Assembly: GCA_000708835.1 (NCBI GenBank)
Contig: DF237519.1
Span: 1-58,088 of the forward strand
Direction of reading: 5' to 3'
DNA from: Klebsormidium nitens
Lineage: Eukaryota; Plantae; Klebsormidiophyceae
DNA length: 58,088 nt
Part shown: positions 1-54,827 of the stretch, one piece after another
Numbering within the stretch: position 1 is the stretch's first letter
Layout of the letters: each line of letters opens with the position of its first letter
Position numbers and translations under genes: made by a program
Notes under the pieces: generated by a model
Seen by the model: the letters and a program-made list of their open reading frames with translations, nothing else
What the model was told of the DNA's origin: nothing
The model's database searches: none

Positions 1-858
1 CACTTCGCGCGCCCACTCGCGGACTAAGCGTACTCGTTACCGGTGGTGCTAACAGCTAAGTGGCGGTCACGGGGAGACGGGGCAGTACACCGGTTGGTTT
101 CGTCATACCTAAATTACAAAAATCATGATGCACTGGCTTCCACTACCTAGGACCAGAAGCCACGTTCAACTTCCATCAGAGTCCAGACGGTATTATATGA
201 CAAAAAATCTGTGTGCCCTTTTTGGGTTCTGGTCATAGCTTCCACCAGGCTGCGACAGTGGCCATCTCTTCCTCCTTCCTGCATTGTTTGACACATGCAA
301 GGCCTCGTCTGGGCTGTTTGGGGTGTGCTCAGTGTGCTCTATCCTGACTCAGAGCAAGAAGTGCTTCCTGAAGTTCTGGTGTCGTCCGAGGGTCTTTAGA
401 AAAAGCCGCAAAAAATGCAGACCCTGGGTTAGCTGAATAGTGGGTTTGGCAAAATCCGGGCCAGGATATTGATGGCATGAGACGTTCACCTCTTGACAGT
501 TTTTAAGGTTACCTGTTCGAGCCATTGAACCCGCCGACCACTAATAATAGGCAAGTTAGCCACAGACCATGCTTTGAAAAGATGTATTCACACAGAAACC
601 ATCGGATCTGCTAGACAAGACGAGGTACCGGTGTGAATACCTTGATTTCATTACCCCGGAAACCAACTACGAGGGTTGACTGTAGAGGCTGCATGCAGCT
701 TTTCCCAGCTCGAAGTGGTGCACGCTTTTGTCATTGATCAGGAGTCTGTTGTCGCCTGCTTGCAGTGGCACCTCGCTTTGATCGTACATGACCGAGCCTG
801 AGAGTGCTGGATTGTGCCGCCTTATCCCGTTACAACCAGGAACACTTGGTGTCACAGA

Positions 859-3800
859 ATGCAGGAGGATCGGGGGGATCAAGCAGATGCCGTGGACTTT
901 GACAAAGAAGCTGTTCACGAGAAGGAGGAATTCCTACAAGGAGGTGTGTGTTTCAATCATATGCAGTTGGCCTTTGAGAGTGTCATATGAGAAACTTCCG
1001 AAACAATTTTTTGCTAGTTCACGCTGTTTTCAAAAATAGATGTTTCTTCCCACACTTTTTCATCGTCCCTTGCAGTCGTTTACCCACACCTCTATTGCAA
1101 CAGCTGGGATAGGATCCAGTCTCAAAATCGATCACACCAGAGTGCTTCGTTCAGCACTTTTTAGAAACTGAAGTGTGTGTGTAGAGTACGCTTTCTGGGT
1201 ATGGTCCTGAGCAGCGTGTCTCGTGAGGCACCTTTTAGGAGCGGTCCGTTCTTCCCTCACCTGTTCTTGTTGGGCTGGCCAGGTCATTGCTTCCAAACCA
1301 CATGAAGATCAGATTGACTGAAGGGCATTTTCTTAACTGACGGGCATTCTCTTGACCCGCGAGATGTTTGGGGCAATCTATCATCCCTTCCCTGAGTTCT
1401 AAGAGCCGCCTTCTATCCTGGTACCGCATATACATTCTGCAAATGCTTGCTTCGCTTAGGCTGGCTTTGTACTTAGGATAAGTGTCATGTTTCCCTGAAG
1501 CAAACTCATCTTTCTTGGGGTGTTTGGTCCTCTTCAAATCGATTTTGCTACGGGTATTTTGACACAAGCCTTGTCCTCAACCTACTTTCGTTTGCTCATG
1601 TCTAATATTCTGGATTCGCCGCTCTCAAGGTTCTTTCTCCTACCTCGACAAAACTCCGCTTCTGCACGCCAGAAAAGTCAATCTATGCACAAGCACTTGG
1701 ATTCAAGTTCAGTGTTCATTATTTCTTCTAAACGATTGTTTTCATTATGACTGAATTTGTCTGTACATGGTTGAAACCTTCTCATACTGATGCCCCTCCT
1801 TATCATAACCCCGGAAACTTGGATTAAGAAGGTGCTCCTCCATTGTGCAGTAACAGACGTGCTTCTCTGGAAGCGGCCGCTCCTCACCGTCCTCATGCTG
1901 GCGTCAGCAACCCTCTCGTACTACCACCTTGTCTTCCGCTACCCTGGGATTGTCTCGCTCGTGGCGGACGTGCTTCTGATTCTGACGTGCGCTGCTGGGG
2001 TAGTCAAGGTCGTGGCCAAGCAATTTGACATCAGGTGATTCTTCCTTCTCGCTTTTCTATTGTCTATATTCATTTCGAGAATGTGTCCACTGGGGCCTGT
2101 TACCAAACTATGTAGTGCAGGAATATTTTTACTGAAGTATGACTGCTTTGTCGATCTTCATCGCAGGGACTAGGCCTGGTTACGCCCTCCTAAAACTTTC
2201 TATGCTAAAGAAAACTGTCTGGAGATAGCCACTATCCTGTAGTAGTAGCATTACTGTCCTCCTTCTACTACTCCAGAGTGGGACCCAGAACGAGCTCTCT
2301 GGATTACGTCCATGGTTCAATCAGTCTTGGAGTTGTCTTCGAGTTAAACTTCCATAGCCATTTTTGTATATTAAACAAGGCCCCCGAAAAGACAGTTTCT
2401 TGAAGACTCGGTCACCTCTGTCCTGCAAAGGTTGCCACATTCAAGGTAAATCAGACCTATGTTCGTTGTTGCATGCGAATCTCGAGCTCGCCCTTCCAAA
2501 GCCGGTCTTTTGCTCAAAAGCAAGGGTGCTTTGAACATCAGTCTGCAGGACCAAGCAGATGCATTCCCTGTTCGCAGCCTCCGGTATGTGCCCCGGAGAG
2601 GAGTGTCCAAATCCTCGTTTTTTAGCCTATCCCATCTTGGAGGTACGGTCCAGAGCCTGACTCTTAAAACAGATTCTGGCCTTATATTCATCCGAAACAA
2701 GGCTTTCGGGACAAAACTTTGGTCCGCAAGATCGGACGGTTGCTTTTTTGACAGCCGCCTTCCTTATGCGCCCCGGTTTGGGTTGGTTTTTACCCATCGT
2801 TCGAGTTTTGGGGAACTGGTCCCAACCTGTCCTAAAACCAACCTTTTATGCGGAAAGTTTAATTATCCGAGAGATTCTGTCTCCCGAATCATAATTCACA
2901 AAACAAACCCGTTCCTCCTCTGCAGTCTCCAGGACGTTCCACCGTACGAGGTGTCCGAAACCACGTCCGTGTGCATCGTTGCGTCCATCGTTAACACACT
3001 GGGGGCCGCAGAGGGCGTCCTAAGGGGGGCCGCCAACGGGCAGGACTGGAAGCTGTACGGCAAGGTGAAGTCCTGGCGAAACTTGACTTGATTCATGAAA
3101 AAGAAACGAAATCTGGCTTCATTTTGTTCCTTAAATTTCAAGGTTCGTCGCTGCTGTGCTTCTTCGCCGCTCCTCCTCCGTTTTTTCCTGCCAGCCTCCA
3201 GTGGTTTCTTCGAAGATGCGTGTCAAGTAGCTATGATGGCGGTCAGTAACTTTCTGGCGGGAGTATCGGACCCGTTCACTTTTGACACGTTCAGCCTGTT
3301 TTCTTGAATTCTTCCTTCAGTATGCTTTTGTTTTCAAGGCAATCCGCTCGTGGGCGCCGCTCCTTCGTGTGTCTCAGCTCCTAGACTCCCTCTGCGAGGC
3401 GTCTTGTGAAGTTCGCACATGGGTGTGTCGTTTCGGATATTAAGACGTGAGATCGCGCTGCATTTCAGGGCTCTGCCTCCTTGCTAGCGAAGCTTTTGCA
3501 GTGCTCGACATGCTGTGCCGCTTCGCTTCCACGATTGACCACCGTTGAATGCCTATTGAACGGTCTTGCCTTGTACGAGGCTCTCTCGATTGCGTTTGAA
3601 GGGGTGTCCTCGACCGTTGATCGCCCTCCCATTGCGAAGGAATCAGATACAATCTTTTCGAAATAAAAGATTACAAATACCCCGCTGGATCTTCTGACCA
3701 TGTGACCATGGGCCATCATTTTCAGCAAGGCTTTGCAAGAGTTGGGTTCAAAGTGGGTTTGGTCCGCTGTGACAAATGGTCCGAGATCGTCCCTCTGCTC

Positions 3801-4872
3801 AATCCTTGATCTGTCCTGCGCACTGCTCAAGACTGGACGAAGTGACTATCTTCGAGAGCAGAAATTGATGTCTTTTTTCGCTTCTTTTCTGACGTCTCTT
3901 CCGTATACAGGTCTGCGTAAGCCTGTACATAGCGTCGATTGTCGGACGGGCAGCCTCGGGGGCGACCGTTCTGTTCCTAGGCAAGTCTTCCTATCTCAGT
4001 CTCTCCCATCTCCGGGTCGCCCTTTTTCACGAATCGCCAGAGGATTTAGAGGGTCTCACAAGAGACTTGTTTCGGCAATTGCTTGTAGGTTTGGTTGGAA
4101 AGAGGCGTGCTTGGGTGTCAGGGGTGCAGGCGTGCAGGGGGAAACGGGGGCGTTTGACACGTCATACGTTCCTTTATGTTGGCTTTAGGCGGCTGTCTCG
4201 TTATTCGTTACCAAGTCGGAAGCGGATTCTGCACTATACTGCTCTCCTTAGTACTAAATCCAAGTAGCGACGCGACTGGCTGGAGAGTGGATTGTCATTG
4301 ACGGTCTCGAAACTAGTGGCTAGTTGCAATCTGAAAGACCCACGTCGCTGCTTCTCTTACCTTCTCATTGAGGATTGTTATGACAACCTATGCTAGGAGA
4401 CAGTCCTGCGTGAGTTTCTATGACATTGGGTTGAAGCTTCTTCCATTCGGCTTCATTGTAGGCTCTGTCATGCGGTCTTGCCTCTGCAATCTGCAGATCA
4501 AAGATCACAGTATATCAAGTGGCTGCAAATTAGCAGCGGTCACACAATCGCACTGCTTTTGCCACTACGTCTGCAGAACGTCGGGAGAGGCTGAAGATCC
4601 GTTAAGGACCGGGTGCGAGAACCCGCCAACTGTTCTTGATGGTCCAAATGCAACGACAAAGTGCTTTCGGCAGGGCCTCACGTACTCTATTCTCTGCAGG
4701 CACTTGGCTGCTGTTTCTGCTGCCCCCTCTGTTCAGATTGTTGCCATTACCTGAGCTAGCGAAAGAAATGGACTTGGCGGAGCCGCCACCCGGGCAAACG
4801 TACGAAGATGTGGAGGACGTCCTGCTGCCCGCTCTGAGTCGGATAACCACTCCCCGACCATCGCTTCAATAA
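859..4872 (+). CDS. Reticulon-like protein (RTNLB22/23-like), 5 coding exons, ~216 aa
   Basis: Model join(859..943,1851..2034,2926..3064,3911..3980,4700..4872); phases match at all four introns. The translation contains the reticulon motifs VTDVLLWKRP, LSYYHLVFRYPGIVSLVADVLLIL, VNTLGAAEGVLRGAANGQDWKLYGKV and SLYIASIVGRAASGATVLFLG. Intron 4 has a GC donor. The first exon and start codon are the least certain part. Confidence 0.85.
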
Positions 4873-6769
4873 GCCAGGGTGGTCAAGAGCATTGGATCTT
4901 TGTTGAAATTATCAATGTGCTGGTCATTTTAAGGAAGTAAACCCACATGCTTTGTCCGGTCAACCATGTCTTCAAAAAGGCCCAACCTTACAAGCATGCA
5001 TTCGATTGTGTGCAATGTCGTCCAGATTCCGTCTGAGTTCAACGTTCATCCTGATGTACGATGTGAATCAAAGCGTGACACTCTGGAGGTTCATGACCAT
5101 TCAATTGGTCCAGCATTCATGTATTTATGCAATGCCAGCCGCTATTGGCGTTAGTGACTGCCTGGCACTGGCGCGTGTGGATTGAATGACATGCATGTGC
5201 CATGGACTCAGCCGCAGGAGATCCTCAATGTGATCATTCCCAAAGCATGGCCGCCCGGGGAAGTTGATGGCGAGGCCACATGGCCGGTCACTAGCTCACG
5301 CCTTTGCAGATCAAATATCGAAATGGGGTAGCGCTAGCGCTTTATAACTCGAGCCTACAGTCTCGACGAGTGACCGCGCGGCCGTCATATAATTAAAGCT
5401 GCATGCATGGCTGATTGATCCGCCATGCAGATTACTTGATTGTACTTGACTGCGTGCGCGCCCATGCAGAACTGCTCCAAGCTTTTTTTGGGGAAAACGG
5501 GAGTTTTAATTTTACAGATCACGATGTAGGCTGCAATTGGCTCGATGAAGAGCTCTCGCGTTTGCAACTGTTCGAGTACCTAATAACAGCCAGGCTAACA
5601 TATTCATGCATCCAGCCTCACTTTCTGCACATCAAAGAATTGACCATGATGAAGACGTTGCCTACTAAAGAATATAGAATAGATAGATATTGCATGTGGT
5701 ACTGCAGATTAGGTGCATCATTGCAAACTTGAATTCGAGATTCTAGATCAATTCAACTTAACAGCTCCCACTCTTATAAGTGCGGCCAAGTTATTAGCAG
5801 TCTGCCTAGAAATCCAAGCCTGAGAAGATGGTCTTTGGACACAAATATCCGTACAGCTCATGTCTCTGTCCAGAGGAGCGACTAGCCCTCACCATTGCTC
5901 ATATCAGCTGCTACTTGCGAACCTTTAGTCTTGCATGATAATCAATTGACTGTACCTAAACGTGTCGCTACTTAAGCAATATGATCTGCTACAGTAAAGC
6001 TGAACTCTCTGTTATCTATGCTGAGCCTACCAACGACCACAACCCGCCTACTTGCTGCTTCTTATTTTGCGCGTACACTGGCTCCTATTTTACACCTTAC
6101 CGACCTCTAGTCAAAAACGAGGCCACTCAAGCCTGATATGCCAAATGAATGAGACTAACTCCAAAGCTCAGTCTTACCCTACAATACGAGGAGCGATCCT
6201 GCTACGCCCGCCAAAGACCTCCTTTTGCTTATTACTGGGGTCAGAAGACTGGGGCTTCCTCGCCGCGCACCGAATCACTTAGCAAACGAAAGAAGATATG
6301 TCGACTTGCACTACCGCACTCTGTCTGTGAATGATGCCTCCTCATGGCGTGGTCAGGGCTTACTTTCTTACTTGCGTACTCTCTTTTTTTTTCTCACAAT
6401 TTGTACAGCGCTAATCTCTCCGCTGCTCTTACTGGGGCCGCCATCGAACTTGTCATCTGGTGACCATCAAGCTCTGTCAACGGCCGTCCCCCTGGCTCCG
6501 TTTGACGCGACAAATTCCACCCATTCGCCCCAACCACGCGTTTCCTTCTTCCTGCTTTGCCGTTTCGGCACTCTGCTCTTAGCACTTCTTCAATATCGCT
6601 CTTCTCTTGTCCACCCAAACCCGCCGTCATATCAGACCCGACCTCCAACAGACCTTACCAAACCCATCCTTTTCCACTTCAAACCGAACCTCGTCTCCGA
6701 CTGCGCCCCCGCCTCGATCCTCCCCCATCTCCCCAATACCGTTAAATTCCACCCTTTTTCAGAAACTCA

Positions 6770-29842: not shown

Positions 29843-31483
29843 GCCCAGGTAAGGTTGCACGCGATTAATCATGGCCCACTGACAATGAGTTAGGTCAATT
29901 GTAGGTCCGATTTCACCGCAAAGGTAATCCTTCATAGTTATTCTACAGGTGCAGCTAGTTGGATATTGTGCAAGCGCAAGATGCTTGAAAGATTACAATT
30001 GACAGAGCAAGAGTTTGACGTAAGTTCGACACTATCATAGACTTGACATCATTCGAACAGGACAGAAGGCTTTCGCCCTGTACGAGATTCAAGCAGTACC
30101 TCAGCGTCAGTTTCGGCATTAAGTCCGAACCCATGGAATTTTGTACAACTGCTTAATTTGCTCATATCATGGTTGCCATATTATCTTCCACGTAATACGC
30201 GCAGCCTGCAATTGGGCTTATAGAGCTCGCTGCACAAATGCCCGTTTTTTAAGTGCAGAGATCTGACTTGCTAGCTGGCACATTGCAGTGCATTGGAATT
30301 ACCGCATGTGTTTGCATGCTGATCGGATCCTGTGCAGCTAGGCATGTATATGTGACTGGGAATGCATGCTTATCACCCGATCGATCCAAGTCAGATCGTA
30401 CGTACGTCTGTTTTCCAGCTAGATCGATTTGGTGCCGCCATCTACGAGTTTGGTTGCTAAATTTCCATTTACATGTTAACTCAAGGCCTTTTGCGCTTGT
30501 CAAATGACGCAAAGATTAAGCATTAACATGATTGAGAGAGGAAAAAAAAAACGCAAAGTGTGACAGCAGAATGGGATGTACGTACTTGCAATTGAGCGGC
30601 CAGTACCCGCAACATTAGCATATGCGCAGATTTGCATAGCCAATCCAGTGATGCTACAAATGCTCGATACCTACAACCATGAATCCATAAACCAGGTTCG
30701 ACAATGACATGCATGCCATGTGCTCTCCAATGGTCGGACTTGTGTAGAGCTACTAGCCATTGTAACTTAAACTACATGAAAAACCTGATCGAAACCTGTG
30801 AAATCTTCTGACGAACCTTTGGGATGAAGAGATTGCAGGCTGATTCCACTCTGTGACAAACTCGCTCACTGATCCAGCCCGCTAAAAAATGACTATGAGC
30901 GATCAAAGCATCTACAGATGTGAATGCAGAACGGCCGCATGGACATAAGAATCCAGAGATGTTGTGAGGGAAAAAGGAGAACAGCAGAGGAAGAATGAAG
31001 AGAGTATATTTACTTCGTTACAAACACCGTCCTTCAGAGTTTTGGAACCCTGCAAACACACACGAAGGAGTGGTTGAAGACTTCGCAAATGTGTCGTTTA
31101 AGACTTGCGAACTGATTTAAATGCTCACACGATGTTATGATTTCCAGTGCTCACACGATGTTGCGGAACAGGTAAGTGTGGAACTGGGTGATCAGCTCAT
31201 CCAAACACACGCTCAAGAACGTTCTCTCCTTCAGTCTTAAGCTTTGCACCATGCCCACATGGCATCTGGCCATGCTTTGACGAAAACCAAATTTTTCAAA
31301 AGCCATTGCGGCAGGTTTGACAAAGTAGTATGAGATGACTTCAGCAGATGTGAACAGCATGCTCATACAAACTGCGATTGTTGACCAAAGATTTGAGATC
31401 GTTAACGCTGACCATCTGCTCCCTAAGTTGCCAGATAAGGATTCAGCGTGCAACTGCCATCAGCGCTTACCATCATTTGCAAC

Positions 31484-33349
31484 TTAGGTCTCAATCTGCT
31501 CCCTGAGTCGCCGGATGGTACTCCGTACTGTGACCGCACTAGCCGTGTTCAAAGTGTATGCGCCCCCTGCCTTGGTCTTCCCGCTCTTGTTGCAGTGCCA
31601 GATGCCAACAGCTACCCGCTTGAACGAGAACTGCACGCGGAACAGGGCGGCCAACTCGTCAGCAATAGGTTCTATCTTTCCCTAGAATCAAATCGAGATA
31701 GCGTCTGCATCAGCTACCGGCCTAATCACCCCTAGCCAATCCCCCAGACTCTAACAGTCCTTACAATCCTTTTCTGCACTTGACTGCATTCCACTGGCAT
31801 CTGGCCCCTAAAGTATCTGGGCGGCCCCAGCACCATCTCAGATACTAGTTACTCTCAATTGACTTGACGAGCGTGTAACCAGCACTTCAGCTACCCGGGT
31901 ACTTTGGTAAAACCCTGACCCGGAGATGCACAAGCTCGCACCCAGACCCACACTAGCCGCCCAACTAACCGCATCCGTCTCCCATCTCAAGTCGCCTGCT
32001 TCTTTGGTCATGTGAGTTAACCAGAGTCATCGACACATGATAAGCCTGTAGAACCACCTGACTTCTCAAGCTGACGTCCACTTTCAGCCACCGTACAAAA
32101 AGAACTCAGCCCACAAGCGCACCGATGCTCATGCAAACCCGTGAATGTGCCCGCCATAAAGGAGCAATGCCTTACCGTTCCGCTGAACTCGCTGAAGTAT
32201 TTGGAGTGCTGACTGATCTCCATCTTCTTAATCTGCTTTCGCAGACTGGCACCATACCTGGTGCCTGTTACATCGAGCAAGCGGCTTGTCACCAACTAGA
32301 CGCGTGATGCAAAACTACTAGGGAGTACTGACAAGTGGCTGACCGCTATTCGCAATGATAGTACATCACCGTTTTCCATCTCTTGCTTTCAAAGCCTCAT
32401 TGAGAAAGTAACTTCGGGCTGATTGCAATGCTTTCAGCGAGGCTGCTATATCCAAACCCCTAATTGCAAGCGGGTGGAAAGTGGACAGCCTGCCACAGTG
32501 ATTGCGCCCGTACTTTGCAACGCTGACCCGCAGGAACTTAGCAGGATCCTCACAACTTGACATCCCTGCGACTATGTTGTATTCTGCTTAAGAAGACCAT
32601 TACCATCTTTTCGTCGTGATGTCCTTGACATGCCCCACAGTATACCGTACACAGTGGAACTCTGACTTTTCCCACTAAACTGAAGCGGCTTAAGCAACTG
32701 ACTACAATTGTCATTTCCAGTGCCAATGATCAACAAGATGTGCCAAAGCAGCTTAAGCTGCCAGCCCATAAGGCGCCAACCGAGCTGCTGTTGTGCCCCT
32801 TAATATGCATGGATGGGCAAAACTCCTTCGTTAAGCAGAAAAGAGTCGGTCAAGATACAGGCAAATCTTCTATCCAAAGTAACAACTGAAGAGCTGACAT
32901 CAGCTTATACCAAATGGTAATGGTATCTAGCCCTGAGAAAAGTCAAAACAACTCACCATACTTGCCGACGATGCCGGCCTTCTTGGTGCGCTTCGTCTGC
33001 AAAAGGAACGAGCAAAATCCCTTCAGTGCCTTCGAACCAGGGCTGCTTGCAGCACTTTGACTTGTACTGTGGTTGCCTACAGCACAAAAACGTGCAGATT
33101 TGCGCGGCTCAACAATTTCAAAGTAGAAGGTGATAGGCGGATGTAGGTATTCAGAGATGAAAGCAAAACACAATCTAAAAGGTGCCCCCGCTAAACCCCC
33201 TCCGCTGAACGCGTGTCGTCATCAAAGGTGACCGCCACCAAACCGGCGGGACATCCAATGTACCCAGACGAAAGTGACCATCTGCACACACAAAAGAAGA
33301 CGAGCCTCAAGGTGAGGAAGGAAGACGACAGAGCATTTGACCTCACCAT
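31484..33349 (-). CDS. RPL37a: 60S ribosomal protein eL43 (L37a), 92 aa, with three zinc-ribbon Cys replaced by Ser
   Basis: complement(join(31484..31630,32176..32264,32957..32996,33347..33349)) = 279 nt. Translation [92 protein letters not shown]. The first coding exon is ATG only. Confidence 0.96.
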
Positions 33350-34471
33350 GGCGGCCGACTCCTTGTCTGCTCTTGTACACGACGTTGAAAGAGGGAGAGC
33401 TCGGCGCCGAAGGTTGAGCTTTCAGCAGACCCGCGATCCAAGCTTATGATTGATTCGAAAGTACCCAGAGGTTGGGCAGGGGCATCAGGATGCTCGGGAG
33501 GTTTAGTTGACACTTTATTGATCGACCGGGACCAATGACCGGATTCTACGGCATTTGGTCTCAATCTGGGTACACATGCACGTATCGAGCGTAAGTACTA
33601 AGAAAGATTGGCGTCTTCAACTTTAAAGTTCTGGCCTGGGCTGCTGATGTCATCAGGGTGCGCCCCTGCTCGCGGGTTTCATGCGAGCTTCTGCAAGTCA
33701 AGCAGCCGGTGCAGTAGGTGGATAAGTTACCCAGTACGGTATGCATACTGTACACGAAGTACCACCGGTCACAGGGCACAGGCTGACACCTAGAGACACA
33801 CTACCTTGAGTCTTGAAACCGCGTACAGCACCGTTCAGTACTGATACAGGTGAATGGTGAAAATTACATAAGATGCAGCACGAGTACTGCAGCAGAGCTG
33901 CAAAGCTCTCTAAAACAGTAGCGTTCCTTCTCCGCCAGGTCTAGGGTCGGGTCAAAGGGGTTTCGATTTCTTGGATCCGCCCGCGTTCATCTTCATCTTT
34001 GGAAGCTGGAGGACGCAGATTGTTACGAGTAGCGCGGCGAGCTCTCAGTGCTGATTCAAGTGGATTTGTGGATTCCACGTTAAATCTGGTCCACAAATGA
34101 GAAGAGTCTGATGGTGGTTTCTTTGAGCCTGCATATCTCTATTTGACTTTCATAACTTGAAGCCTGACAGTGTTCTTACGCCTTTCGAAGGGGCCTGCAT
34201 TAGGGTTCCAAAGCTGCAGAGAATCTCCAAATCGGGCTTCCCAGACTTCTAGACCTGCTGATCAGCAAGCTCTTGCAAATGTGCACAGCTTTCATATCAT
34301 CTTTTTGCAGAAGTCGTGCTGCTAAGGGTCGTGCTGTCAAGGGTGTCGCTTTTCTCAGCCTAAGTTCGGTAGTTTCTGCGATTCAAAGCTTTGACAAGAA
34401 AGAAGCCGAAAAAGGCGCCTTTCAGGCTCCAACATCTGTAGCTCTGTAACCGGGGGAAGCAAAAAGCAACC

Positions 34472-51796: not shown

Positions 51797-52781
51797 TGTT
51801 AGAAGTATTTGCGCACTGCCACTCGGGTCACACTGGCGCCAGTGTAGCCCGAGTGGCNNNNNNNNNNNNNNNNNNNNNNNNNNNNNNNNNNNNNNNNNNN
51901 NNNNNNNNNNNNNNNNNNNNNNNNNNNNNNNNNNNNNNNNNNNNNNNNNNNNNNNNNNNNNNNNNNNNNNNNNNNNNNNNNNNNNNNNNNNNNNNNNNNN
52001 NNNNNNNNNNNNNNNNNNNNNNNNNNNNNNNNNNNNNNNNNNNNNNNNNNNNNNNNNNNNNNNNNNNNNNNNNNNNNNNNNNNNNNNNNNNNNNNNNNNN
52101 NNNNNNNNNNNNNNNNNNNNNNNNNNNNNNNNNNNNNNNNNNNNNNNNNNNNNNNNNNNNNNNNNNNNNNNNNNNNNNNNNNNNNNNNNNNNNNNNNNNN
52201 NNNNNNNNNNNNNNNNNNNNNNNNNNNNNNNNNNNNNNNNNNNNNNNNNNNNNNNNNNNNNNNNNNNNNNNNNNNNNNNNNNNNNNNNNNNNNNNNNNNN
52301 NNNNNNNNNNNNNNNNNNNNNNNNNNNNNNNNNNNNNNNNNNNNNNNNNNNNNNNNNNNNNNNNNNNNNNNNNNNNNNNNNNNNNNNNNNNNNNNNNNNN
52401 NNNNNNNNNNNNNNNNNNNNNNNNNNNNNNNNNNNNNNNNNNNNNNNNNNNNNNNNNNNNNNNNNNNNNNNNNNNNNNNNNNNNNNNNNNNNNNNNNNNN
52501 NNNNNNNNNNNNNNNNNNNNNNNNNNNNNNNNNNNNNNNNNNNNNNNNNNNNNNNNNNNNNNNNNNNNNNNNNNNNNNNNNNNNNNNNNNNNNNNNNNNN
52601 NNNNNNNNNNNNNNNNNNNNNNNNNNNNNNNNNNNNNNNNNNNNNNNNNNNNNNNNNNNNNNNNNNNNNNNNNNNNNNNNNNNNNNNNNNNNNNNNNNNN
52701 NNNNNNNNNNNNNNNNNNNNNNNNNNNNNGCCACACTGGCGCAAGTGTGGCCCGAGTGGCAATGCGCAAATACTTCTAACA
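51797..52781. mobile_element. Insertion bounded by palindrome copies 3 and 4 with a 5-bp TSD (GACAG); interior unsequenced
   Basis: GACAG (51792-51796) | TGTTAGAAGTATTTGCG...N872...TGCGCAAATACTTCTAACA | GACAG (52782-52786). The two partial copies differ at three positions where they overlap, so they are distinct copies. Confidence 0.85.
51858..52729. other. Assembly gap (872 N)
   Basis: Run of N. All ORFs crossing it are artefacts. Confidence 1.
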
Positions 52782-54827
52782 GACAGTTGGAAAAAGCTGT
52801 CCGACGCCTTGGTTGAGGGGTCGGACGTATGATCGTTCAACCAGCCAGTCATTCAAAGCCTTCTGACGAAAAGTTCGGAAAAATGAGAGGTTAGCTACCC
52901 AAAATCGGCTTTTCGGCTTCGTTGGATGGAGGGCTTCGCTTCTCTTTGTGTGCGTAGAACGCACTGGCAACTTTTAACAAGACGCTGCCCTCTTTCTGGT
53001 TTATGAAGAAGAGGAGTGTATCACAAACCAAAGGAGCCATCCTGATTCACGAAACCGATACGAAACGAGCCATCTTCACTGTTTATTTTCTTTCTTCCAA
53101 GACGTAGCTTCAGGGCGACCTGTTCGAAAACCATGTGAGCTTCAAATGCTCAGGTGCTCTCTATCATAGCCAGGTATACACAACTTCTAAGCAACTTCGC
53201 TTCTGAGACCGTCATAAAGGTCCAGCCGCATCAGGTCAGCCCTGCCCAGACCGTGAGCTCGACATCACGACCAGGATATGTGCACTCAAACGAGGCCAAG
53301 CATGCCAAGCATGAAGCCTACCTAGCTGAGAGCCGTCAAGGTCCTTGCTCGGTTGTGAGCTTTTGAACCTGATCAATCAGGGTTCTGATCGGACAAACGT
53401 ATGCGGCATCTGAGACAAGCCAAACCACGCAAAGAACTGAGCACCAAGGCTCGCGCCCAAGTTCGTCACAGGCGCACACAAGTCCGGCCAGGCGGTGTCC
53501 GCGCAACCCGATAGCGGTGTGAGCAATAACATGGACACATATCACCGCAACCGTACCATTCAGTATTCTTGAAAAGCCTCCCCTGGCTAGCTTGACCAGA
53601 CTGCTCAAGGACTAGAATCAAGTAACCTTCTACCTAACCTGTTCAAGAAGTTTCGTACAACGACCATTGACTTCCACTGCTGTCAGCGGTTCTGAGAGCT
53701 TCAAGGAACACGGGCGAAGCAGCTGGGCGAAATTCTAATGCACATCAACAAGAGACCAGAACATTGCCTTACAAGCGGCTCAGAAGACAGTGACAGTTCA
53801 CCGTGTGAGCTCCTCAAGCTCACCGGACTTATCACAGCCATTATAATTGAATCGCTCTCACAGGTCTACTCTTGAGAGGTTGATGGAGTTTCAGTCCGAA
53901 ATGCTCTCACGTCGAGCGAGGCAGGAAACGTTTTCACCAAAGAAATGAATTGGATTTGGAGACTACTTAGATTAGGCTGCGAGACACATGACGTTGGGTC
54001 GGAAACAAAAAGGTGGCTCCCGGATGCCATCATAAGCTAAGGCAAGTGCAAAACACTGATGATTACATGACACGCCACATGAAAAATTCTGAAGCTCTTC
54101 TGATGGGCAAGAAAATCAGAAATCACAAGCTGCCACAAGGTCCCTTCCGCCCAGAACTCGAAGTACGTGGCAGAATCGTGAAGTCTGATATCTACCGAGA
54201 AACGCCAGTAGTTTTGATTCGTCGTAGCCACCACTCGAGTGATCCGGGAGGTGCGAGTAAGCAGATGAAAGATGATGCCCTGCTAGTTCCTGAAGCGAAA
54301 TCTTGTCACAAGGAAGCGTAACGTCAAGGCGAACACACCTGAGCAATCAGATTCCACATTCTCAAGAGCTTGCAAATGGCACACTCCAGGCTGCAGCGAC
54401 GTATAACTTGAGCAGACCCTTGAAAGGTACACCAACTGGTACTCCCACCCAAGCCAGCAGAATACTCCATATCTATGCTGGATCGAGGCAGATCGGACAC
54501 TTTCCTTTCCAGAGGCACTATAAGTGCTACCTCAACTTGAAAGCAGTTTGAAGAAGCGGTCAAGCAAAAGCTGGCAGACTCCTCGGTCTCAGAAGTCGGG
54601 CGTGACACGGAAACTAGCTCGAATGATAGGGTGACAAGCACCTGCTTCGGCAGATCAAGAATGGCATACACACTTGCATGCATGATGAAAAGTGCCCAAT
54701 GACAGAAAGAACATTCGATCGAACATTCGTGAAAGTTGTGATGCTGTTTAGACCATCTCTTTGAATGGTTGGGTCCGCCCAACTGAGTGTTCCCAATAGA
54801 CTGTCAAATGACGAATCGCGACTGGAA

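What the first reader, a model, noticed from the sequence alone, without database searches (positions are those of the whole stretch)
31484..33349. Zinc-free (C-minus) eukaryotic ribosomal protein eL43
eL43 normally has a C39-x2-C42...C57-x2-C60 zinc ribbon (plants: KYFCEFCGK...WGCKDCGK). Here it reads KYFSEFSGT...WHCNKSGK, i.e. S39, S42, C57, S60. All three Ser are AGC, one transversion from TGC. The rest is highly conserved with intact introns, which argues for purifying selection rather than decay. Cys-less paralogues used under zinc limitation are established for bacterial ribosomal proteins (L31, L33, L36, S14) but are unusual for cytosolic eukaryotic ones. Either this lineage has a constitutively Zn-free eL43 or this is a metal-sparing paralogue (inference).
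Basis: partly seen in the sequence, partly recalled or inferred. Interest (0 to 1): 0.7.

Follow-up and report, generated by a model that had tools for sequence, protein, structure and literature searches.

The report
Zinc-free ribosomal protein eL43 in Klebsormidium
This green alga's very highly expressed gene for ribosomal protein eL43 has serine in place of three of the four cysteines that hold a zinc ion in eL43 elsewhere. It is a natural zinc-free version, previously described only in some salt-loving archaea and in yeast mutants.

Summary
A minus-strand gene with four coding exons (CDS 33349..31484) encodes a 92-aa eL43/RPL37a reading S39, S42, C57, S60 where other eL43 have CxxC...CxxC. 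All three Ser codons are AGC.

- **Real and expressed.** In three RNA runs from three studies, exon depth is about 200-22,000 and depth in introns 2 and 3 is 6-76. The contigs skip introns 2 and 3 exactly as modelled and show no other letter at the Ser codons.
- **No second copy seen.** No other eL43-like contig at 80% likeness or more was laid in those runs.
- **Shared within the genus.** A Klebsormidium subtile transcript protein (P0093:17-108) is 100% identical. An environmental relative differs in exon 4 by six synonymous changes (including AGC to AGT at S60) and one replacement.
- **Rare in this sample.** Of 299 fetched eL43 sequences that cover the ribbon, 286 are CCCC. The rest are one alignment artefact, gene mis-models, or sequences lacking a single Cys.

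Best reading: this is the constitutive eL43 of Klebsormidium, and its ribbon folds without zinc. It is not a zinc-limitation paralogue.

Precedents lower the novelty. eL43 of Haloferacales archaea lacks the finger, and in yeast only one of the four Cys is essential (PMC8305020).

I could not search the whole genome, so a divergent Cys-type copy is not excluded.

The parts
33350..33376 (-). 5' UTR. The upstream limit is approximate.
   Evidence: Unspliced RNA contigs end at 33371-33376 in three runs. A pyrimidine tract, CTCTCCCTCTTTC, lies just upstream.
33347..33349 (-). Exon 1 coding part: the ATG only
   Evidence: The sequence reads ATG|GTGAGG. The K. subtile transcript protein reads ...AAM-TKRTKK. 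A loose end in metatranscriptome X20 at 32997 joins ...GCCGCCAT(G) to exon 2.
32997..33346 (-). Intron 1 (350 nt, GT..AG)
   Evidence: RNA depth is 55-487, higher than in the other introns.
32957..32996 (-). Exon 2 ([13 protein letters not shown] plus the first base of the G15 codon)
   Evidence: The RNA joint 32263|32956 is seen in three runs.
32265..32956 (-). Intron 2 (692 nt, GT..AG)
   Evidence: Contigs skip 692 bases, with ends CT..AC on the + strand, in X4, X8 and X13.
32176..32264 (-). Exon 3 (G15-T44). It holds the first ribbon knuckle, which reads S39-E-F-S42-G-T44 where other eL43 read C-x-x-C-G-K.
   Evidence: Pfam PF01780, 36.6 bits. A 90-nt RNA contig with no other letters lies here at depth 8,367, 19,250 and 1,038.
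32191..32193 (-). Codon 39: AGC, Ser (Cys in other eL43)
   Evidence: No other letter is seen in the RNA runs.
32182..32184 (-). Codon 42: AGC, Ser (Cys in other eL43)
   Evidence: No other letter is seen in the RNA runs.
31631..32175 (-). Intron 3 (545 nt, GT..AG)
   Evidence: Contigs skip 545 bases in X4, X8 and X13.
31484..31630 (-). Exon 4 coding part (F45-T92 plus TAA). It holds the Trp motif RVAVGIW and the second knuckle, C57-N-K-S60.
   Evidence: Pfam PF01780, 58.5 bits. The best solved relative is plant eL43, E = 2e-19. RNA depth is 579-5,355 with no other letters.
31592..31594 (-). Codon 57: TGC, the only Cys kept
   Evidence: It is invariant across alignment A1.
31583..31585 (-). 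Codon 60: AGC, Ser (Cys in other eL43)
   Evidence: An environmental relative has AGT, which is also Ser.
31050..31470 (-). Intron in the 3' UTR (421 nt, GT..AG), starting 13 nt after the stop codon
   Evidence: Loose ends at 31470 in X4, X8 and X13 match 31019-31048 exactly. Splice sites were read.
30950..31049 (-). Exon 5 (rest of the 3' UTR). The downstream end was not determined; 30950 is a placeholder.
   Evidence: Only the first 30 nt are confirmed by RNA contigs.

Best explanation
This is the working, constitutively expressed gene for large-subunit ribosomal protein eL43 (RPL37a) of Klebsormidium.

In this lineage three of the four zinc ligands of the C4 zinc ribbon became serine (C39S, C42S, C60S). 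Each change is a single TGC to AGC transversion. Neighbouring knuckle residues also changed (K44T, K58N, D/A59K). A single remaining thiol cannot form a tetrahedral zinc site, so the protein most likely enters the 60S subunit without zinc. The small three-stranded ribbon would then be held by its hydrophobic core (F38, F41, F45, F47, the Trp motif RVAVGIW), by hydrogen bonds from the serines, and by its contacts with 25S rRNA and uL2.

Shown: the sequence, the splicing, high expression, identity in a second species, and mostly synonymous divergence in a relative. Inferred: absence of zinc, presence in the ribosome, and that this is the only copy.

The likeliest history is drift. Yeast mutagenesis indicates that zinc binding is largely dispensable, so once one ligand was lost the others were free to change. 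C57 was kept for a role that does not depend on zinc. An adaptive gain, such as fewer oxidation-prone thiols or lower zinc demand in an alga that lives on land, is possible but untested.
For: - **Family and orthology.** Both main exons match PF01780. The protein is 83-84% identical to Chara and land-plant eL43. All alignment-wide invariant residues outside the ligands are kept.
- **Not a retrocopy.** The gene has four GT..AG introns.
- **Expression and splicing.** In runs X4, X8 and X13 (three studies), exon depth is about 200-22,000 and depth in introns 2 and 3 is 6-76. The joints lie exactly at 31630|32176 and 32263|32956. No other letters appear at the Ser codons, and every contig laid is at least 99% alike. 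Sixteen probable RNA runs from six studies hold 78-93% of the sampled words of the stretch.
- **Second species.** EukProt K. subtile P0093:17-108 is 100% identical, while its 5' leader differs from the window's.
- **Selection.** A relative in metatranscriptome X20 shows seven listed changes in exon 4. Six are synonymous, including AGC to AGT at S60, and one is H56Y.
- **Where the changes fall.** The ribbon (residues 36-64) differs from other eL43 at 12.8 positions on average, against 8.3 among the others. Outside the ribbon the figures are 8.3 and 8.9.
[quoted passage not shown] Haloferacales eL43 naturally lacks the finger (PMC8305020 main text and Supplement S8.c).
Against: - I could not search the whole K. 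nitens genome, so a Cys-type copy below 80% nucleotide likeness, or one that is not expressed, is not excluded.
- There is no direct evidence that the protein sits in ribosomes or lacks metal.
- The AlphaFold models are uninformative. Ribbon pLDDT is 72-80 for Klebsormidium and 73-82 for the Cys-type Chara control.
- K. nitens and K. subtile may be close relatives (my recollection, not checked here), so identical proteins say little about how old the trait is.
- Which yeast Cys is essential is not stated in the source I could read. If it is not C57, compensating changes would be needed.
Confidence: 0.75

Rival explanations
1. This is a metal-sparing paralogue. Klebsormidium would also carry a Cys-intact eL43, and this Ser-type copy would serve under zinc limitation, as the C-minus L31, L33, L36 and S14 paralogues do in bacteria.
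For: The bacterial analogy is well documented (for example PMC5912738 and PMC9825181, listed). The whole genome could not be searched. The exact 92-aa protein is absent from the public protein collection, so the public annotation may list a different eL43.
Against: - The Ser-type mRNA is at very high depth in all three runs laid, and 16 probable RNA runs from six studies hold it. That is not the pattern of a gene induced only under limitation.
- No second eL43-like contig at 80-99% likeness was laid in the K. nitens runs. The same call did lay 80-90% alike eL43 contigs of other organisms from the metatranscriptome, so such a copy could have been seen.
- No Klebsormidium Cys-type protein turned up in three word searches and one exhaustive search.
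- Only one eL43 locus lies in the window.
Confidence: 0.12
2. This is a decaying or non-functional copy, a pseudogene in the making, whose ligand loss reflects relaxed constraint.
For: Three of four otherwise invariant residues are lost, and further residues unique to this protein cluster in the ribbon.
Against: - The reading frame is intact and all four introns are canonical.
- Exon depth reaches the thousands and splicing is correct.
- Every invariant residue outside the ligands is kept.
- The protein is identical in K. subtile.
- Exon 4 of a relative shows a 6:1 ratio of synonymous to replacement changes.
- The degenerate eL43 sequences in the databases look different: they lack a single Cys and carry scattered damage elsewhere.
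Confidence: 0.03
3. The ribbon still binds a metal through a new ligand set, for example C57 with H56 and the serine or other side chains, so the protein is not metal-free.
For: H56 sits next to C57, and serine hydroxyls can occasionally coordinate metals.
Against: - H56 also occurs in Cys-type eL43 of Pyramimonas, Tetraselmis and Mesostigma.
- H56 is replaced by Tyr in the environmental Klebsormidium relative, so it is not a conserved new ligand.
- In yeast, changing any single Cys abolishes zinc binding (PMC8305020 Supplement S8.c).
Confidence: 0.07

Closest known systems
Eukaryotic cytosolic eL43 / RPL37a / yeast Rpl43 (YL37a), Pfam PF01780
   Same: It is an orthologue by sequence, 83-84% identical to Chara and land-plant eL43. 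It has the same length (92 aa), the same N-terminal basic tail with the GKYGTRYG motif, the same Trp motif (RxxxGIW) and the same C-terminal helix. An intron follows the start codon directly.
   Different: The C4 zinc ribbon (C39, C42, C57, C60) reads S, S, C, S, and the invariant K44 of the CxxCGK knuckle is Thr. Of 299 fetched eL43 sequences covering the ribbon, 286 are CCCC and none lacks three ligands.
Archaeal eL43 (L43e) of Haloferacales and most Natrialbales, which lacks the C2-C2 finger (Pfeiffer & Dyall-Smith 2021, PMC8305020)
   Same: It is the same ribosomal protein family. The zinc ligands are lost naturally across a lineage, the Trp motif is retained, and the copy is apparently the organism's regular one rather than a conditional paralogue.
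   Different: That case is in archaea and this one is in a eukaryote. The same paper states that eukaryotic orthologues contain the finger. I did not compare which positions are retained in the archaeal proteins.
Yeast YL37a Cys-to-Ser mutants (Rivlin, Chan & Wool 1999, J Mol Biol 294:909, as summarised in PMC8305020 Supplement S8.c)
   Same: They are Cys-to-Ser replacements at the same four positions. Each abolishes zinc binding, yet only one of the four Cys is essential. A eukaryotic eL43 can therefore work without zinc.
   Different: Those are single laboratory mutants, whereas this is a natural triple replacement with extra changes in the knuckles. I could not read the original paper, so I do not know whether the essential yeast Cys corresponds to the retained C57.
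Bacterial C-minus alternative ribosomal proteins (L31B, L33B, L36B, S14B), regulated by Zur
   Same: A zinc-ribbon ribosomal protein has lost its Cys ligands and still works.
   Different: The bacterial forms coexist with a C-plus paralogue and are induced under zinc limitation. Here no C-plus copy was found and expression is high in all runs examined.

Membership tests
eL43 / Ribosomal_L37ae (PF01780) | Profile match above Pfam's gathering score | tested here: met
   Exon 3 scores 36.6 bits and exon 4 scores 58.5 bits, against a cut-off of 21.9. phmmer against PDB finds plant eL43 at E = 2e-19.
eL43 / Ribosomal_L37ae (PF01780) | Conserved Trp motif Rxxx[GAS][IVL]W between the two knuckles. 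The Trp is essential in yeast according to PMC8305020 Supplement S8.c. | tested here: met
   The motif reads R49-V-A-V-G53-I54-W55. R49 and W55 are invariant in alignment A1.
eL43 / Ribosomal_L37ae (PF01780) | C2-C2 zinc ribbon, CxxC-x14-CxxC | tested here: not met
   The four positions read S39, S42, C57, S60, and RNA confirms this. The feature is also absent from accepted eL43 orthologues of Haloferacales. It therefore defines the zinc-binding form, not the family.
eL43 / Ribosomal_L37ae (PF01780) | Being a component of the 60S subunit | not testable with these tools
   This needs ribosome purification with mass spectrometry, or cryo-EM.
C-minus alternative ribosomal protein paralogues (bacterial type) | Loss of the Cys ligands of a zinc ribbon | tested here: met
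   Three of the four ligands are Ser.
C-minus alternative ribosomal protein paralogues (bacterial type) | Coexistence with a Cys-intact paralogue in the same genome | tested here: inconclusive
   None was seen in the window, in the K. nitens RNA contigs at 80% likeness or more, or in the protein searches. The whole genome could not be searched.
C-minus alternative ribosomal protein paralogues (bacterial type) | Expression restricted to, or induced by, zinc limitation | tested here: not met
   Exon depth is very high in three runs from three studies. Sixteen probable RNA runs from six studies hold the gene. Culture conditions were not available, so this is indirect.

The most novel reading that the evidence does not exclude
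Loss of the eL43 zinc site may be part of a wider, selected reduction of zinc-thiol sites in the Klebsormidium cytosolic ribosome. Such sites are prone to oxidation. Losing them could be an adaptation of this desiccation-tolerant land alga to oxidative stress or to zinc-poor surfaces. C57 would be kept because it has an essential role that does not involve zinc, possibly the same one that makes a single Cys essential in yeast.
Probability: 0.1. Interest if true: 0.6.

Novelty: new member of a known kind. Interest (0 to 1): 0.35.

Why it matters
eL43 is one of nine cytosolic ribosomal proteins whose CxxC motifs are described as conserved across eukaryotes and are discussed as zinc stores and redox sensors (PMC13090322).

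A natural, highly expressed eukaryotic eL43 with only one of its four ligands shows that the zinc site is dispensable in a free-living eukaryote, not just in yeast mutants. It also gives a ready-made variant for three questions:
- what the zinc contributes to 60S assembly (its known chaperones in yeast are Puf6 and Loc1; this is my recollection, not checked here);
- why one Cys is retained;
- whether Klebsormidium ribosomes carry less zinc.

The practical lesson is modest. Zinc-binding annotation transferred by homology would be wrong for this protein, and the exact protein is missing from the public protein collection I could query.

Tried and rejected
- **Joined model not sent.** Following the operators' rule, I did not send the joined (spliced) 92-aa model to any search or fold tool as typed letters. 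Exons went in by reference. Once K. subtile P0093:17-108 proved identical, I used that database reference instead. The joined CDS was translated only inside a local script, for checking.
- **Metagenome scan.** A scan for the Ser-type first knuckle, using KYFSEFSG back-translated with AGY Ser codons, gave 11 loci. None showed an eL43 match beyond the motif; several look like bacterial polymerase genes that share the motif by chance. TCN Ser codons were not scanned.
- **AlphaFold2.** Models of the Klebsormidium protein and of a Cys-type Chara control gave the same moderate confidence for the ribbon. This is driven by the alignment and says nothing about zinc.
- **Tree.** A tree of 33 eL43 sequences is unresolved. 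The Klebsormidium branch is 0.19 against a median of 0.094. This dates nothing.
- **Rfam.** No snoRNA or other RNA family was found in the introns or anywhere in the window.
- **Promoter.** I found no telo-box upstream and only one site-II-like hexamer.
- **Literature.** Rivlin et al. 1999 and Makarova et al. 2001 are not held. I could not establish which yeast Cys is essential. I found no paper on Cys-less eukaryotic eL43.
- **Exon 3 in the metatranscriptome.** Run X20 mixes many organisms, so I could not tell from it whether the relative keeps S39 and S42. One spliced contig does run through T44 into FSFKRVAV, which is Klebsormidium-specific.

Full report
**Observation.** On the minus strand, an ATG at 33349-33347 is followed directly by a GT..AG intron. 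Three further coding exons follow: 32996-32957, 32264-32176 and 31630-31484. Together they make a 279-nt CDS for a 92-aa protein. Exons 3 and 4 each match Pfam PF01780 (Ribosomal_L37ae) above the gathering score. Exon 4 finds plant eL43 chains as the best solved relatives, at E = 2e-19. The four zinc-ligand positions read S39 (AGC, 32193-32191), S42 (AGC, 32184-32182), C57 (TGC, 31594-31592) and S60 (AGC, 31585-31583).

**Is it real?** Earlier notes of this scan name the genome as Klebsormidium nitens. I did not verify the species, but the identical K. subtile protein described below fits the genus. Twenty public runs hold the 2,051-base stretch. Sixteen of them are probable RNA runs from six studies. 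I laid three of these (X4, X8, X13, from three studies) and one plant-associated metatranscriptome (X20) on 31400-33450.
- In the three Klebsormidium runs, exon bins have depth of about 200-22,000, and introns 2 and 3 have 6-76.
- Contigs skip 31631-32175 and 32265-32956 exactly at the predicted GT..AG borders.
- The 90-nt exon 3 contig (depth 8,367, 19,250 and 1,038) and the exon 4 contigs (5,355, 5,297 and 579) carry no other letter.

The serine codons are therefore in abundant, correctly spliced mRNA. An assembly error, RNA editing back to Cys, and a silent pseudogene are all ruled out.

**Intron 1 and the 3' UTR.** The intron 1 joint is not listed for these three runs, probably because the 5' exon is very short. 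It is supported in three ways: the canonical splice sites, a loose end in X20 that joins ...GCCGCCAT(G) to exon 2, and the K. subtile transcript. Loose ends at 31470 match 31019-31048. This reveals a fourth intron of 421 nt in the 3' UTR, starting 13 nt after the stop codon.

**Relatives.**
- The exon 4 ORF found 91 proteins. Nearly every full-length one has CxxC...CxxC, and none has the S-S-C-S pattern.
- A search centred on exon 3 found P0093, a Trinity transcript ORF of Klebsormidium subtile in EukProt. Its residues 17-108 are identical to the model over all 92 aa, while its upstream leader differs from the window's (AGKEPAAM against ADKESAAM). This confirms the splice model independently and shows the S-S-C-S pattern in a second named species. 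From then on I used P0093:17-108 as the reference for the whole protein.
- A third word search centred on the ribbon and an exhaustive HMMER search of 1.84 billion representatives added no other Ser-type protein.

Of 299 fetched sequences that cover the ribbon, 286 read CCCC. The other 13 are one alignment artefact (a 2-aa insertion), gene mis-models, or sequences lacking a single Cys. Most of the last group look degenerate, with damage elsewhere too. The sample is biased towards green plants and algae, because only the best 150 of 1,610 hits are returned.

**Selection.** Metatranscriptome X20 holds a Klebsormidium-type relative. One spliced contig runs through T44 into FSFKRVAV, and its 5' leader matches that of K. 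subtile. In exon 4 the seven listed differences are six synonymous changes and one replacement. The synonymous ones are codons 60 (AGC to AGT), 61, 65, 67, 71 and 77. The replacement is H56Y. C57 is unchanged.

Against 45 full-length eL43, the residues unique to Klebsormidium are S39, S42, T44, N58, K59, S60 and the C-terminal T92. The ribbon (residues 36-64) carries 12.8 differences on average, against 8.3 among the other sequences. The rest of the protein is as conserved as in any other lineage (8.3 against 8.9). The pattern is a remodelled ribbon inside an otherwise fully constrained ribosomal protein. It is not decay.

**Paralogue question.**
- The window holds one eL43 locus.
- In the three K. 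nitens runs, every contig laid at 80% likeness or more was at least 99% alike. The same call did lay 13 contigs below 90% likeness from other organisms in X20. An expressed second copy in the 80-99% range would therefore have been seen.
- No Klebsormidium Cys-type protein appeared in any search.
- High depth in all runs does not fit a gene reserved for zinc limitation.
- I could not search the complete genome, so a divergent or silent Cys-type copy remains possible. I put this at about 0.12.

**How it probably works.** With one thiol left, a tetrahedral zinc site cannot form. [quoted passage not shown] The Trp of the central motif is essential.

The Klebsormidium protein keeps that Trp motif (RVAVGIW) and exactly one Cys. 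I therefore read it as a zinc-free eL43. Its ribbon would be held by its hydrophobic core, by serine hydrogen bonds and by its rRNA and uL2 contacts. This is inference. The AlphaFold models are uninformative, with ribbon pLDDT 72-80 against 73-82 for a Cys-type Chara control. Which yeast Cys is essential is not stated in the text I could read, and the original paper is not held. This should be checked, because a match with C57 would be a neat concordance.

**Comparison with what is known.** The same paper documents that archaeal eL43 lacks the C2-C2 finger in all Haloferacales and most Natrialbales, and states that eukaryotic orthologues contain it. A 2026 survey lists eL43 among nine CxxC ribosomal proteins conserved in six model eukaryotes (PMC13090322). 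Bacterial C-minus paralogues are the classic analogue, but they differ in being conditional second copies.

**Verdict.** It is a new eukaryotic member of a known kind: ribosomal zinc-ribbon proteins that have shed their ligands. That includes eL43 itself in haloarchaea. Yeast mutagenesis already predicts that such a protein can work. Interest is moderate to low. It would rise if other zinc-binding ribosomal proteins of Klebsormidium show the same trend, or if the retained C57 proves to be the residue essential in yeast.

Noticed in passing
window 32997-33346 (intron 1): In RNA contigs, intron 1 has depth 217, 487 and 55 (X4, X8, X13). Introns 2 and 3 have 6-76. This suggests slower removal or partial retention of the intron that directly follows the ATG. 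Rfam finds no snoRNA there.
   Followed up: partly
window 31050-31470: A 421-nt GT..AG intron lies in the 3' UTR, starting 13 nt after the stop codon. It is spliced in three RNA runs.
   Followed up: yes
window 31484-33349: The exact 92-aa product is not in the roughly 15-billion-protein public collection. The only identical entry is a K. subtile transcript ORF with a 16-aa upstream extension. The gene may be missing or mis-modelled in the public K. nitens annotation.
   Followed up: partly
run X20 (plant-metagenome metatranscriptome), laid on window 31400-33450: X20 holds spliced eL43 mRNA of a Klebsormidium relative. Its 5' leader matches K. subtile, and H56Y is present in part of the depth. 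A Klebsormidium-like alga was therefore active in that plant-associated sample.
   Followed up: partly
window 52001-54000: G+C drops to 0.32, against about 0.50 elsewhere in the window. The stretch overlaps the palindrome and Copia region that other notes on this window describe.
   Followed up: no
proteins P0082 and P0241 (database hits): A maize 'metallothionein-like' entry carries an eL43 C-terminus, and a 923-aa Closterium protein clusters with eL43. Both look like chimeric or merged gene models in public databases.
   Followed up: no
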